Below are positions 58,801 through 63,723 of a stretch of DNA of 64,000 nt, piece after piece. The notes below the pieces were generated by a model. The model worked only from the letters and a program-made list of their open reading frames with translations, ran no database searches and was not told the origin of the DNA. A program made the translations under genes and the position numbers. The stretch covers positions 6,510,001 to 6,574,000 of the forward strand of contig OU015568.1 of assembly GCA_907165135.1 (NCBI GenBank). Reading direction: 5' to 3'. The stretch's first letter is position 1. Each line of letters opens with the position of its first letter. The DNA comes from Oikopleura dioica. Lineage: Eukaryota; Animalia; Chordata.

Positions 58801-61800
58801 GTCTCAATATTCTAATGTGATATCATCGGTGACTATTACGGCGCCGCGGGTTTCTAGCGGCAAAATTTCTTCGGTAGACTTTTTCTTAGTCTGTCTCAAC
58901 ATCTGTAATTTGCCATTAACATGATTTCAAGGGGCGCGGCTTTCGACAAGAATAATTCTAGTGCAATAATCGCGTAATTTTTAACGAACTGGGTTAGATC
59001 CGAAACCCGAAATATTCACCTTGTAGCCTCTACTTACTCCCTGCTCTTGACGAATTGAGTCTGCTTGCTCTAACCCAAAATTATCGCATTCTCGTTAAAA
59101 TAACCCAATTAGTCACTAGCACTTCGTATTGCCCTTCATTTTTCGACTTTTGCCTTTTCCAAAAATAGTGCATTCCTCCGAAATTAGAAATCCAAACTGA
59201 AAAGGCTTGGAGCGAGAAGAATCTTCGCGATCATCGCCAAACTGAGCACCGAGTCATCGTCGAAACTCCAACTCGCTATCCCTGTCGATTGAGCAAGACT
59301 GGCTGCTACGATGTCTTCCAAACCGCGCGAGATCGAAACGAGCACGAAGAAATGGTAAAACACTATCAATGCGAGCCCTGTGGCCTTCGTTTTCACAAGC
59401 TGACAGGACCGTGGATATATTTTGATTGAAAAAATGGTCGGATGCTTGTTGATATCTCCATCAGCACCATTAAAAAACGGTGTTGTGATAACAGATCGCT
59501 CCCGCGATCGTTCGTATTACGAAAGATTCGAAAATTTATAGAATTTGTGGTGATAATATACAGTAGATTTGCGGCCGAGAGAGGTTAATTCCTCGTGCGA
59601 TTATTGAAAGCAACATATACAAGTCCGTCCTTTTCATTTTGAACTCAAATGAAACCGTTAATTAACATAATATTCTGCGTCGAGTTTCACCCTTATTTTT
59701 GGGATGAATTCCAATGGTTACTATAGTAAGAATTTGGCGATGTTATTGCTGAAAACCAAGAAGTCACTTGCGGCTCGAGTGAGAGAAGACTTAAGCCGCG
59801 CATAGCGCGGCTTCTCTGCCTTTTCTCGCTCAAAGCCGCAAGCGGCTTCTTGATTTTCAACAATAGCATCATCATATTCTTACTATAGTAACCATTGGAA
59901 TTCGACCCAAAATTAGTCAGTCTGGAATCAGACTCGCAGTGTTTCAATGTTCATAAAATATCCGCGATACAGAAAGAAACGCACACCAGAAAAACGACGT
60001 TGACTGTAAATCCTACATCTGCCCATTTTGCGATAAAGTGTGGCCACTTGAACAGCGCGGCGACCGCCAAAAAATGAAAACGCACATGTTGAGCTGCGAG
60101 AATCCGCGGAATTTCGTGTGCGATGTCTGCGGACAAGGCTACAATACAAAGCGCCATTTAAAAGGTAGTGATTATGCCTGCCAAATATTCGTTCAGCGAG
60201 GGTAATCGCTTCGTTCGCTCGTCTTTCTCCAGCCTTGTCATTAACCTTCCCGGAATGCATGTTTGAATTCAACAAAATCCACAAATCTAATCACTTTTTC
60301 TTCCTTATTTTTCGAAAGAGCTCAAGTCCGCTTTTAGAAGCAAGGGTAGCTCTTGTTTCTAATTGCCACTTTTCTGCTTCAAACTTCTAATTTGATCGAT
60401 GGCAAGCACTTGAACGGACCTACTCCTTGGAGGATTACGGTTGAGCACTAATTAAGCTATCTCCGGGTTTATCGGTTGATAAGGTACTCGCTTGTTACTG
60501 GCACTATGTGCTTCTTTATCATAATTATGAAAAACATAGGCGCGTAAGGATTTAACTTAAGTTGATTGAGATGGTAATTTTGGCGAAGCCGCTTCGCGGC
60601 TACGTTTTTGTACAAGCCGCAACGCGGCTTTTTATTGAAGCTCTTTCACAACCCTGACTCAGGTCTTTACACTGGTTTCTGTGTCGTAGAATTTCGTTTT
60701 GAAAGTTGGCTAAAGAAATCTAGAGCACCTGTCAGTCCACAGTGACGAAGCTCAACGACGTCGCGATAAGGCCCGCGCCTCGCGATTGGAACTTGGACAA
60801 GGGCTCGCATTCATTCCAATAGTAACTCCCTAATTTTCTAGCGCACATGCAACTTCACACTGAAGAGGGCCAAAAGCGCCGCGAAGAGACCCACGCCAAG
60901 CTTCTAGCACATGGGCAAGGGGCTCCGCATTCATTCTTTTTTTCGCCTCTCGGTTCCACTTATTTCTAGTGCTTGAGATATTCGCCAGCACCATCATCAA
61001 ACAAATAGTCAAAATAGCGACCAAATAGATCCTTGTCAAAATGTAGGTCAACCCTTTTCTTTCCCAAAGCTGGTCAAGGGTCGAATTTGTCAATGGAATC
61101 AATCAGTAGAAGAATTCAGAGTGAATTCCAGCGCTGAATTCTTCCATTTCTTCTCTCCCATTTTTCGAAAATAAAAATGAATGCGCAAAAAGTGAACTTC
61201 GGCGGAAAAATCCAAGACGATTTCCCTGCACGATGTGCGATAGAAATTATACTACGAATCAAAAGGTAAGTGCCGGATTGAATAGTTTCTATATCGCTTT
61301 TTTCTCTCTCTCATTTTTTTATCGAAACACAATCAGCGGTCGACATATTTTCACGTGTTTGGCGGTCAAGTAGCGCGCGTATTCTAAATGTCGACTAACG
61401 TGCACGTGGTTCTTGAGCTGGAGACTGTTTTTATCGCTGGTTCATTTTTTGGGTTAGACACAAGTCTTGCCCAAATCCATTTTTTACATTAGAATCTAAA
61501 TTTTAAGCGAAAAAAGATTCATTCTCATTCAATTTTAAAGCGATTTAAAAGCCACGTGACATAACATACGTGACCTCAATTGACCTCTCGTGACCCCAGA
61601 TGACCTCAAGTCCTTTTTTAGCTTCGATTTCACATGACGAGCGCCCACGGCATCGGAGAGAAGCTGGAATGCCCACTCTGTCCACGAAAACTGATGACAC
61701 CGAACAACCTCTCCGGCCATTTGAAAACCGTCCATGGTCGCGAAAAAGTCACGAACAAATGCTTCCTCTGCCACACGGAACATCCCACCAAAGTAAAGGC

Positions 61801-63723
61801 CATCGCGTGCGAAGTGGCGCACAGAAAGGAAAGGTTCGACCAAATGTCAAAGCTATCATTTCGCTGAAAACGCACCCCCGCGTTCTTATTTACTGATAAC
61901 GCGCGAAATAACATGCGATAAGGGGCCTGTTCTTCAAGTTACGCAACATTGTTATCGTAATTTTATACAGTTATAACACAAAATTTACAGTGAGATTAAA
62001 TTCTTTTCATCATTTTTTGAGAAAGCAAGAGTCGACAAGTTAAGGGTTCCTCGGGGTTAATGAATTTTAAGTGAACATATTGACACCCTTATTTTCTGGG
62101 CTCGTCAAACAGTGTAGAAAACCTGAGTCAGGTTCGGAAGAGCTTTCTTCAGAAGCTGGCTCAGATTTTCGAAACAGGTTGATGAGCCCAGAAAATAAGG
62201 GTGTCAGTACGTTAACTCAAAATTCATTCACCCCGAAGAACCGTAAACTTGTCGGTAATTACTTTAATTATTGAGTTTCTATGTCAATTTTAATTGATTT
62301 AGCAGCGTTTTCAATTCATCGCGTCTAAGTGTCAATGAAATTGAAGCTGCTGTTATGATGATAACTTTGAGTAATCAGCGACCTTTTGATGATATTCAAT
62401 TCAATATCGAGTTCGCCAGAACATGACGTGGCGAATTCTAAAAAAATAACGATGGTTGAACCAGTTTCAGGCGCACGCAGATGGAAATGTCGAAGGTTTT
62501 CTTGACCCAAACGACTTTTCGTATCCGGCAATCAACCCCGAAACCGGCGAAATCGAAAATGTTCAAGTCAGTGGCAGCGAACTCGGCGAAAATTCAGCGC
62601 TCTACTAGCTGAAAATTAAATTATTACGTTCTACTGCACCTTTCTTTTTCAACTTGTACAGTTTTTATTATATTTTCGCCGAAGTGAGGAGAAAAATGGC
62701 CGCCGCTCGAACGTAATTTAATGAGTTCGTGAAAATATACGCCCACAGCTCGGTGGGTATTGCGACGACTCATTGGATTTGACAGTCGGATGATCGGATG
62801 TGAGATAATTTCGCCGATTCCGACTGTTGATCAAACAGATTAAATAATTTAAAATTCTACGATCATCATCATCTTTCTTTAGTCTATGCACAAGATGTTC
62901 TCGTATAAGGTCCAAGAATGTCATTAAAATTTCGAAAATTCGATATCTATTCAGTAATAAAAATTGAGTTAAAGAAACCAATAGGGTTTAAGAATTTAGT
63001 GTGCTGATTATTAAATTCTTTATAGGCGGAACTCGAAAATTTACGACTGTATCTTTACTATAACAAACGCTGTATCTATTGAAAACTCATTATATGGAGA
63101 ATCTGTGAACCACAAAAGCCCTGGTTAAAGTCGGCAATCTTCGGAAAGCCCTGTCGATTCTGAAACGCCCTTCATTTTTGGAAAACACCACTGAGTTTCC
63201 AATAGATACAGCGTTTGTTATTAGTAAAGATACAGTCGTAAATTTTCAAGAACGCAAGTTTCGCCCATAATGAATTTGATAATCAACGCACTTAATTCTT
63301 TAACCGGATTTGTTTCTTTAACTCGATTTCTATTACTGAATAGATATCGAATTAGCGACATCGATTCAAATTCTCCTCATGACGCCCCGCTGCCGCAATT
63401 CGCCAAGACAATAAATAAACATCAACCTTTACATTTGTTATTTTGTCTCGCCATATTTCTTGAAATCGAATCTCCTAATAAATATGTTTTACATCTCCCA
63501 ACACGCAACCACCAAAAATGAAACAAATTTAGCTTTATCTGGAACAACTCGTCATGTTACGATCCATATTGGAGCATTTTGCCGATCCTGATTCTCGGAC
63601 ATCAGCTGTCGGAGAAATCAGCACTTGTTGGACGAGATTATGTCATTGCCACGGTTGTTCTTCTTTGGGGAGTCAGACTGACTTACAACTGGATGCGGAG
63701 CTTCAGAGCCTGGTCTCATCAAG
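55891..63723 (+). CDS. DUF1295 / steroid 5-alpha-reductase-like membrane protein with a 7.2-kb intron; continues beyond the window
   Basis: Exons 55891-56045, 56240-56320 and 63533-63723 give ...YYLLIDLACTGVIFCFS|FIWNNSSCYDPYWSILP...LLWGVRLTYNW...WSHQ. The phase-2 junction across 56321-63532 restores the conserved F-S-x-x-x-NSS-x-YDPYWS motif. Confidence 0.75.
56531..57104. mobile_element. Foldback/MITE with inverted arms of about 230 bp
   Basis: aaaatgacattctcggg...accgggacccgtaacttttaagtttg...gagcagctcgagatctatttgcgga matches the reverse complement of about 56862-57104. Confidence 0.85.
57562..61867 (+). CDS. Multi-C2H2 zinc-finger protein nested on the same strand in the DUF1295 intron; 5' end approximate
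   Basis: Exons ~57737-58214, 58553-58677, ~59957-60164, 60724-60802 and/or 60842-60920, 61193-61265 and 61623-61867. Fingers CKRCDYK..H, CPFCDK..KTHMLSC, CDVCGQGYNTKRHLK-EHLSVH, CTMCDRNYTTNQK-LRFHMTSAH and CPLCPRKLMTPNNLSGHLKTVH. Confidence 0.75.
59706..59903. mobile_element. Foldback palindrome of about 200 bp
   Basis: gaattccaatggttactatagtaagaat is a perfect 28-bp inverted repeat at the two ends, and imperfect pairing continues to the centre. Confidence 0.85.
60560..60672 (+). mobile_element. Partial copy of the CCTGAGTCAGG-TIR MITE family
   Basis: Aligns with the right half of 63768-63938 (gcgaagccgcttcg-ggct...aagccgc...gcggctttt...cctgactcagg). Confidence 0.7.
62044..62242. mobile_element. 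MITE with inverted arms of about 65 bp
   Basis: ggttcctcggggttaatgaattttaag...tgacacccttattttctgggctcgtcaa versus ttgatgagcccagaaaataagggtgtca...aaaattcattcaccccgaagaacc. Confidence 0.8.
62937..63353. mobile_element. MITE with inverted arms of about 140 bp and AATT flanks
   Basis: aatt|cgatatctattcagtaat...ttacgactgtatctttacta versus tagtaaagatacagtcgtaa...attactgaatagatatcg|aatt. Confidence 0.85.

What the first reader, a model, noticed from the sequence alone, without database searches (positions are those of the whole stretch)
60724..60920. Duplicated exon pair offering two alternative His pairs for one zinc finger
Seen: the upstream exon ends mid-finger (CDVCGQGYNTKRHLK, phase 1). Two equal-length homologous exons follow: EHLSVHSDEAQRRRDKARASRLELGQ and AHMQLHTEEGQKRREETHAKLLAHGQ. 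Each supplies H-x3-H, and each is followed by a similar non-GT donor region (caagggctcgcattcattc, caaggggctccgcattcattc). If they are 79 nt (next acceptor 61192), including both breaks frame, so they are mutually exclusive. If they are 78 nt (AG|GG donors, acceptor 61131), both could be included. Inference: an isoform switch that changes the finger's helix end and the following linker, controlled through non-canonical donors.
Basis: partly seen in the sequence, partly recalled or inferred. Interest (0 to 1): 0.7.

Follow-up and report, generated by a model that had tools for sequence, protein, structure and literature searches.

The report
Duplicated alternative half-zinc-finger exons
A zinc-finger gene of the tunicate Oikopleura carries two tandem copies of a 73-base exon, each able to finish the same zinc finger; a short conserved RNA element may decide which copy is used, an ordinary kind of alternative splicing not reported in this animal in the papers searched.

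Summary
A spliced contig from a sister Oikopleura lineage (L010/P0152) joins the upstream exon directly to exon B and skips A. It then joins B after 73 nt (…CATGG) to the base after the AG at 61191-92. In the window, exon B is therefore 60842-60914, followed by a GC-AG intron. The 78-nt model with acceptor 61131 fails: that reading frame is closed by a stop codon in the sister lineages.

Exon A (60724-60796 by homology) appeared in no transcript. It is nevertheless as conserved as B across four lineages, with no indels or stops and mostly synonymous changes. Its donor is unresolved (GA at 72 nt, AC at 73, GC at 79).

New here: an identical 11-nt element follows each exon. It is complementary to a site 7 nt upstream of the exon C acceptor. 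The post-A element and this site are invariant in all lineages. This is the docking-site/selector layout known from insect mutually exclusive exons.

The likeliest reading is a mutually exclusive pair guided by RNA pairing (about 0.45). The main rival is A as a cassette exon spliced in frame to B.

The scan has not noted this on other DNA.

The parts
59990..60164 (+). Upstream constitutive exon. It encodes finger 1 and the Cys half plus helix start of finger 2 (…CDVCGQGYNTKRHLK). It ends in phase 1 with the canonical donor AAG|GTAGTG. The start at 59990 (AG at 59988-89) is inferred, not verified.
   Evidence: sequence; transcript L010 is colinear with 59954-60164 and leaves the genome exactly at 60164.
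60165..60290 (+). Highly conserved block at the start of intron 1. It is more conserved between lineages than the coding exons. Function unknown.
   Evidence: three-lineage alignment, long invariant runs; a predicted stem pairs the 5' splice site with GUCAUUAACCUU, with no covariation; fold no more stable than shuffles (z = -0.63).
60724..60796 (+). Exon A. It encodes E-HLSVH-SDEAQRRRDKARASRLEL-G. The 73-nt end is set by homology with B. The real donor is unverified: GA at 60796 (72-nt exon), AC at 60797 (73 nt) or GC at 60803 (79 nt).
   Evidence: Present in all four lineages with no indel or stop. Window versus L006: 10/71 nt differ, as 5 synonymous and 4 non-synonymous codons.
60806..60816 (+). 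Selector A (CGCATTCATTC). Ten nt are perfectly complementary to 61176-85.
   Evidence: D6, I12.: -13.0 kcal/mol, second-best partner of the dock in the whole region; invariant in L006, L013 and L014, where it is the best partner (-15.7, 11 bp).
60842..60914 (+). Exon B. It encodes A-HMQLH-TEEGQKRREETHAKLLAH-G and is 73 nt long. The donor is GG|GCAAGG, a GC donor.
   Evidence: L010 joins the upstream exon to B, and joins B after 73 nt to exon C; the B-spliced finger (P0152 residues 26-48) matches PF00096 positions 1-23 of 23.
60926..60945 (+). Selector B. It is a copy of selector A extended by a T-run. It forms 20 nt of pairing with two mismatches against 61166-85. Found in the window lineage only.
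   Evidence: I2, 90% complementary.: -18.5 kcal/mol, the best partner; pairing probability 0.93; absent after exon B in the sister lineages.
61166..61185 (+). Docking site. Its core AATGAATGCG lies at 61176-85, and the site ends 7 nt upstream of the exon C acceptor AG (61191-92).
   Evidence: The core is invariant in all four lineages although the surrounding intron cannot be aligned.
61193..61265 (+). Exon C (ELRRKNPRRFPCTMCDRNYTTNQK). It enters in phase 2. Its donor is AAG|GTAAGT.
   Evidence: L010 bases 324-395 match 61194-61265.
61622..61828 (+). Exon D (LRFHM…AHRK), followed by a GA-AG intron (AAG|GAAAGG).
   Evidence: L010 bases 399-602 match 61625-61828.

Best explanation
**What it is.** A tandem duplication of a 73-nt mini-exon lies in a single-copy multi-C2H2 zinc-finger gene. 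The genome matches the size and scaffold count of the Okinawa Oikopleura dioica assembly.

**What each copy encodes.** Either copy supplies helix position +6 of finger 2 (E or A), the H-x3-H pair, and a charged linker of about 19 residues.

**Why only one copy fits.** Exon C is entered in phase 2. Only an mRNA with exactly one copy stays in frame. Both copies at 73 nt, or neither copy, shifts the frame.

**What is shown.**
- The exon layout.
- The B-only mRNA, seen in a sister lineage.
- B's 73-nt end and the acceptor used.
- Conservation of both exons.
- The complementarity itself.

**What is inferred.**
- Exon A is used.
- The choice is made by competing long-range RNA pairing. An element just downstream of each exon (CGCATTCATT) can pair with one docking site ending 7 nt before the exon C acceptor.
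- Pairing of selector A loops out exon B and brings A's intrinsically weak donor next to the acceptor.
- Pairing of selector B bridges the 278-nt GC-AG intron. That intron is long for this genome, whose median is 49 nt.
- Only one selector can hold the dock at a time.
For: **Transcript.** P0152/L010 lacks four introns. It reads …KRHLK|AHMQLH…MAHG|EVRRKNPRRFPC…TTNQK|LRFHM….

**Finger.** Pfam zf-C2H2 matches in full across the junction.

**Frames.** Checked for 78/79/80-nt exons; the 72- and 73-nt cases follow by hand, 73 being in phase with 79.

**Conservation.**
- Exon A: 10/71 nt differ between lineages, as 5 synonymous and 4 non-synonymous codons.
- Exon B: 13/71 nt differ, as 7 synonymous and 4 non-synonymous codons.
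- No indels in either exon.
- By contrast, intron 1 is about 67% identical with many gaps, and the B-C intron cannot be aligned.
- The excess of synonymous changes gives binomial P = 0.02 for A and 0.0001 for B.

**Age.** The duplication predates the lineage split, because A orthologues are closer to each other than A is to B.

**Complementarity.**
- inverted repeats I12 and I2.
- the two post-exon elements are the two best partners of the dock anywhere in 60165-61150.
- the post-A element is the best partner in all three sister contigs.
- in partition-function folds the dock's leading partner lies just after exon A or exon B, though only 0.43 (L014) and 0.54 (L006) of the pairing is there.
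- the chance rate of a 10-nt perfect complement is 0.0025.

**Not a repeat.** The locus is single-copy, so the inverted repeat is not a mobile element.

**Precedent.** The layout equals the duplication model for selector/dock origin and the downstream-dock type of 14-3-3zeta, Mhc and MRP1 (PMC6071210).
Against: - No transcript with exon A was found. There is only one spliced contig in all, and it is B-only.
- Exon A has no good donor in phase with exon C. At the homologous site the intron would begin with AC. The GC donor at 79 nt has a poor consensus (GCTCGC), and the stem would start at its +4 position, which could mask that donor rather than help it.
- Selector B exists only in the window lineage. 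Sister lineages have GCTCGCAAAA plus a local hairpin instead, so competition between two selectors is not conserved.
- Selector A and the dock never vary, so there is no covariation. Both lie near splice sites and could be conserved for other reasons.
- At equilibrium the window fold gives the dock almost entirely to selector B (0.93 against 0.01).
- The whole-intron fold is not unusually stable (z = -1.55).
Confidence: 0.45

Rival explanations
1. Exon A is a cassette exon, not an exclusive partner. It would use the GA donor one base earlier (TTG|GACAAG, giving a 72-nt exon) and be spliced to exon B's acceptor through a 46-nt GA-AG intron. The isoforms would then be A+B and B alone. In A+B the finger is completed by A, and B becomes extra linker. 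The selector/dock pairing would serve another purpose or none.
For: - A(72)+B(73) is in frame in the window and in all sister contigs (my reading).
- GA-AG is the commonest non-canonical class in O. dioica (PMC7072748), and the same gene has one after exon D.
- The A-B intron is 46 nt, against a genome median of 49 (PMC8008620).
- The A-B intron has a CTAAT branch-like site and a TTTTCTAG tract.
- The GGA at A's end is invariant in four lineages, while the matching base after B varies G/T.
Against: - A's GA site lacks the flanks reported as highly conserved for O. dioica GA donors. Those are AG|GAA (PMC7072748); here it is TG|GAC.
- It leaves unexplained why 10-11 nt after exon A and their complement next to the exon C acceptor are invariant inside otherwise diverged introns.
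- The intronless orthologue of a distant species has the single-copy length.
Confidence: 0.27
2. Exon A is no longer spliced into mRNA. It would be a relic of the duplication, kept for an RNA-level role such as a decoy or regulatory element for exon B. B would be constitutive.
For: - The only spliced contig skips exon A.
- The base at B's +1 donor position is A in exon A in every lineage.
- A pattern scan for exon A in JGI contigs returned only unspliced genomic contigs.
Against: - Exon A shows no indel or stop in four lineages.
- It keeps both His residues.
- It changes mostly at synonymous sites, with divergence like exon B's and much lower than the introns'.
Confidence: 0.13
3. One reading: both exons are 78 nt with AG|GG donors and acceptor 61131, so both can be included.
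For: The frame is open in the window itself.
Against: - The transcript shows a 73-nt exon B, and exon C starts at the equivalent of 61193.
- The 61132-61192 frame is closed by TGA in the sister lineages, and the sequence there is not conserved.
- The window's exon B has 1-nt insertions just past 60914, as expected of intron sequence.
Confidence: 0.02

Closest known systems
Downstream-docking-site clusters of mutually exclusive exons in insects (14-3-3zeta, Mhc, MRP1), as summarised in PMC6071210
   Same: Tandem homologous exons. A selector sits in the intron next to each variable exon. One docking site lies in the intron between the cluster and the next constitutive exon, so only one pairing can form at a time.
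   Different: - Only two exons.
- Very short stems (10-20 bp) and very short distances (240-360 nt).
- The dock nearly touches the 3' splice site.
- The donors are non-GT.
- The second selector is present in one lineage only.
- No experimental or read support here.
Duplication model for the origin of competing RNA structures (Ivanov and Pervouchine 2018, PMC6071210)
   Same: The duplicated unit includes the exon plus about 20 nt of downstream intron carrying one arm of an intron-bridging stem. That yields two selectors for one dock, which is exactly the window's layout.
   Different: That model is general and statistical. Here the sister lineages have since lost or replaced the second arm.
Human ATE1 exons 7a/7b, chosen by competing intronic pairings (PMC7797038)
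   Same: A two-exon mutually exclusive pair in a chordate, controlled by conserved intronic elements competing for one partner.
   Different: ATE1 uses five elements including ultra-long-range pairing, and it was tested by mutation. Nothing has been tested here.
WT1 +KTS/-KTS (recalled from memory, not checked here)
   Same: Alternative splicing at the end of a zinc-finger exon changes the finger-to-finger linker and thereby the binding behaviour.
   Different: WT1 uses two nearby donors of one exon and leaves the His pair unchanged. Here a whole duplicated exon replaces the +6 residue, the His pair and the linker.

Membership tests
Mutually exclusive exons arisen by tandem exon duplication | Neighbouring exons are homologous to each other | tested here: met
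   40% identity and 68% similarity over 25 residues, E = 2e-7. DNA alignment; alignment of A and B from three lineages.
Mutually exclusive exons arisen by tandem exon duplication | Same length and same splice phases at both ends | tested here: inconclusive
   Both acceptors are in phase 1. Exon B is 73 nt by the transcript. Exon A's donor is unverified; the candidates give 72, 73 or 79 nt.
Mutually exclusive exons arisen by tandem exon duplication | mRNAs carry one or the other exon, never both or neither | tested here: inconclusive
   One spliced contig only, and it is B-only. Joint inclusion at 73+73 nt shifts the frame (73 is in phase with the 79+79 case run) and skipping both was run there, but 72+73 nt would stay in frame.
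Docking-site/selector competing RNA structures | One site is complementary to an element beside each variable exon | tested here: met
   In the window. In the sister lineages only exon A has a clear selector.
Docking-site/selector competing RNA structures | The elements are conserved between species within otherwise diverged introns | tested here: met
   Selector A and the dock core are invariant in four lineages. Selector B is not conserved.
Docking-site/selector competing RNA structures | Compensatory changes, or mutational tests, show that the pairing matters | not testable with these tools
   Both arms are invariant, so there is no covariation. No experiment was possible.
Classical C2H2 zinc finger (PF00096) | C-x2-C-x12-H-x3-H matching the profile over its full length | tested here: met
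   P0152 residues 26-48 match profile positions 1-23 of 23 across the exon junction. The exon A version keeps the same spacing (by eye).
GC-AG introns | The intron begins with GC and ends with AG at the junction seen in mRNA | tested here: met
   The L010 junction mapped onto the window gives 60915 GC…AG 61192. The same holds in L013. In L006 and L014 the base is T (GG|TCAAGG), which is unexplained.

The most novel reading that the evidence does not exclude
This would be a working docking-site/selector RNA switch in a tunicate. In a genome with tiny introns and many non-GT donors, a weak non-canonical donor would become usable only when a 10-20 bp stem ties it to the downstream acceptor. The choice between two half-finger exons would then be set by which stem forms. 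The system would be conserved across cryptic O. dioica species while being rebuilt in one of them.
Probability: 0.35. Interest if true: 0.6.

Novelty: new member of a known kind. Interest (0 to 1): 0.45.

Why it matters
If exon A is used, one gene makes two proteins that differ at a DNA-contacting position (+6) of one finger and in the following linker. That is a compact way to alter target choice.

The locus would also be a small, tractable case of RNA-structure-guided exon choice outside insects and mammals. The whole regulatory unit fits in under 500 nt. Natural variants already exist among cryptic species, with two selectors in one lineage and one in the others.

It also bears on how Oikopleura splices donors that match no consensus.

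Tried and rejected
- **Rfam scan of 59900-61700.** Nothing found.
- **Protein searches for A-containing products.** Three word-index searches and one exhaustive search gave only unspliced genomic ORFs plus one B-only transcript.
- **JGI contig scan.** A degenerate pattern of exon A alone returned two genomic contigs and no transcript.
- **Retrocopy or paralogue in the same genome** that might record a spliced form: none.
- **Mobile-element origin of the inverted repeat.** Rejected, because the locus is single-copy.
- **A second, upstream docking system** between the conserved intron-1 block and sites near the exons. The best duplexes were long, gapped and different in each lineage, so I dropped it.
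- **A second selector for exon B in the sister lineages** (…CATTCAT… about 45 nt into the intron). It is not conserved between L006, L014 and L013.
- **Steric exclusion by a too-short A-B intron.** Rejected: 39-46 nt is within the normal range for a genome with a 49-nt median.
- **Joined spliced models.** Searches went exon by exon by reference or used natural contigs. Exon combinations were joined only inside a script, to check reading frames.

Full report
**Observation**

- An exon ends at 60164 (AAAAG|GTAGTG), in phase 1, after CDVCGQGYNTKRHLK. That is the Cys pair and most of the helix of a C-x2-C-x12-H-x3-H finger.
- After AG acceptors at 60722-23 and 60840-41 come two stretches. Read in that phase they give E-HLSVH-SDEAQ… and A-HMQLH-TEEGQ….
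- The two stretches are homologous: 10/25 identical residues and 17/25 similar, E = 2e-7 (DNA alignment).
- The locus is single-copy in its genome.
- That genome has 64,281,565 bases in 19 contigs. This matches the size and scaffold count published for the Okinawa Oikopleura dioica assembly OKI2018_I69. That assembly has 11% non-canonical introns and a median intron of 49 nt (PMC8008620).

**Related sequences**

I searched the last clear exon (61622-61864) against the representative protein library. That gave unspliced ORFs from other Oikopleura lineages. Their contigs, together with two word-index searches, yielded:
- **Genomic contigs of three sister sub-lineages**: L006; L014 and L015; L009, L012 and L013.
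- **One spliced contig**: L010/P0152 from a JGI sample.
- **One DNA contig of a more distant species**: L011/P0153. In it the whole region is one uninterrupted exon holding a single copy of the segment.

**What the transcript shows**

L010 is colinear with the genomic contigs but lacks four introns. Its product reads …NTKRHLK|AHMQLHTDEGQKRREMTQAKLMAHG|EVRRKNPRRFPCTMCDRNYTTNQK|LRFHM….
- Exon A is skipped, and the upstream exon is joined directly to exon B.
- B is joined after 73 nt (…CATGG) to the first base after the AG that follows the conserved AATGAATGCG.
- Pfam's zf-C2H2 profile matches over its full length (positions 1-23 of 23) across the first junction.
- Mapped onto the window, exon B is 60842-60914, the intron is 60915-61192 (GG|GCAAGG … AG, a GC-AG intron), and exon C is 61193-61265.

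- The acceptor at 61192 is right, but the 79-nt exon is 6 nt too long.
- The 78-nt model with acceptor 61131 is untenable. In the sister contigs an in-frame TGA lies two codons upstream of exon C, and the sequence there cannot be aligned.
- The window's exon B carries single-base insertions just past 60914, as expected of intron sequence.
- The intronless orthologue P0153 has exactly the residue count of the 73-nt version.

**Is exon A alive?**

No A-containing product turned up. A scan of JGI contigs with a degenerate pattern of exon A alone found only genomic contigs. With a single transcript in hand, this says little either way.

Evolution argues that A is used:
- Between the window and the sister group, exon A differs at 10 of 71 positions, as 5 synonymous and 4 non-synonymous codons.
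- Exon B differs at 13 of 71 positions, as 7 synonymous and 4 non-synonymous codons.
- Neither exon has an indel or a stop.
- Intron 1 is only about 67% identical with many gaps, and the B-C intron cannot be aligned.
- The synonymous excess gives binomial P = 0.02 for A and 0.0001 for B.
- A orthologues resemble each other far more than A resembles B, so the duplication predates the split.

**Exon A's donor**

This remains unresolved. Exon C must be entered in phase 2.
- At the position homologous to B's donor, the intron would begin with AC in every lineage.
- The next in-phase G-start site is GC at 60803 (a 79-nt exon), with a poor consensus.
- One base earlier lies a GA site (TTG|GACAAG, a 72-nt exon).
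- The GA site is out of frame with exon C but in frame with exon B's acceptor, through a 46-nt GA-AG intron.
- GA-AG is the most common non-canonical class in O. dioica. The reported flanks are AG|GAA (PMC7072748), and this site lacks them.
- The same gene has a good GA-AG intron after exon D (61829, AAG|GAAAGG).
- Hence the main rival reading: A as a cassette exon included together with B.

**The new feature**

The 11 nt CGCATTCATTC are identical after both exons (60806-16 and 60926-36), although the exons themselves differ at about a third of their bases (26 of 71). They are the reverse complement of 61176-85, which lies 7 nt upstream of the exon C acceptor AG.
- After exon A the pairing is 10 of 10.
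- After exon B it extends to 20 nt with two mismatches.
- Scanning every 30-nt window from 60165 to 61150 against the 33 nt before the acceptor, these two elements are the two best partners (-18.5 and -13.0 kcal/mol, next best -11.4).
- In all three sister contigs the post-A element is the best partner (11 bp, -15.7).
- Both the post-A element and the docking core are invariant in four lineages.
- In partition-function folds the dock's leading partner is the zone just after one of the two exons: after B in the window (0.93) and L014 (0.43), after A in L006 (0.54) and L013 (0.90).
- A perfect 10-nt complement between 40-nt boxes at this spacing occurs at 0.25% of positions in the window.

This is the docking-site/selector layout of the type whose dock lies downstream of the cluster (14-3-3zeta, Mhc, MRP1). 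It is also exactly what the duplication model of Ivanov and Pervouchine predicts when an exon is copied together with one arm of an intron-bridging stem (PMC6071210).

**Caveats on the mechanism**
- There is no covariation, because both arms are invariant.
- Both arms lie close to splice sites.
- Selector B is missing in the sister group, which instead has GCTCGCAAAA followed by a small local hairpin.
- If exon A uses the GC donor at 79 nt, the stem would begin at intron position +4 and could mask the donor.
- The equilibrium fold in the window strongly favours selector B.
- The intron as a whole is not unusually stable (z = -1.55).

**Likely working**

Either copy finishes finger 2. The copies differ at helix position +6 (E or A), in the residues between the two His, and in a charged linker of about 19 residues.

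| Step | Status |
|---|---|
| Exon layout | shown |
| B-only mRNA (sister lineage) | shown |
| B's 73-nt end and the acceptor used | shown |
| Both exons conserved | shown |
| Complementarity of selectors and dock | shown |
| Exon A is used | inferred |
| Pairing brings one weak non-GT donor to the exon C acceptor and loops out the rest | inferred |

My estimates are about 0.45 for a mutually exclusive pair guided by pairing, 0.27 for A as a cassette exon with B, 0.13 for A as an unused relic, and 0.02 for the 78-nt model.

**Comparison and novelty**

Tandem-duplicated alternative exons and competing RNA pairings are well known in insects and in a few mammalian genes. My paper searches found no report for Oikopleura. 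This is a new member of a known kind. It is of moderate interest because it is very compact, sits among non-canonical donors, and differs between cryptic species.

Searches used exon references or natural contigs.
- Exons were joined only inside a script, to test reading frames.
- The typed pattern covers exon A alone.

Noticed in passing
window 60165-60290 (also 60383-60412): The first ~125 nt of intron 1 are more conserved between lineages than the coding exons, with long invariant runs. A predicted stem pairs the 5' splice site AAGGUAGUGAU with GUCAUUAACCUU about 70 nt downstream, which looks like a U1 mimic. There is no covariation, and the fold is no more stable than shuffles. There is no Rfam match.
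   Followed up: partly
window 61829 onward; L013:2145: Exon D is followed by a GA-AG intron (AAG|GAAAGG). The junction is seen in the sister-lineage transcript L010. So the protein does not end at the TGA at 61865-67 but continues into exons near 62460-62608.
   Followed up: partly
L006:382-383 and L014:1175-1176: In two sister contigs the first intron base after exon B is T (GG|TCAAGG), where the window and L013 have G. Read one base earlier it is G|GT. How this lineage splices exon B in frame is unexplained.
   Followed up: no
L006:392-411: Right after exon B's donor, the sister lineage has a perfect local hairpin (TCGCAAAA-CTTC-TTTTGCGA) in place of the selector copy. It is weakened but recognisable in L014 and L013.
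   Followed up: no
L011 (TARA DNA contig), whole: The orthologue in a more distant appendicularian is intronless across three intron positions of the O. dioica gene and has one copy of the segment. It has an intron at a different place (after …PSTLN). This fits intron gain followed by mini-exon duplication in the O. dioica clade.
   Followed up: partly
L010:1-106: The spliced contig still carries the intron sequence upstream of the exon equivalent to 59990, while four downstream introns are gone. Either the upstream intron is removed late or there is an internal start.
   Followed up: no
window 59694-59775 / 59834-59915: A large inverted repeat (82-nt arms, 87% complementary, 58 nt apart) lies in the intron upstream of the finger exon. 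It looks like a foldback or MITE. Small GCCGC…GCGGC hairpins occur inside it and at 60586-60630.
   Followed up: no
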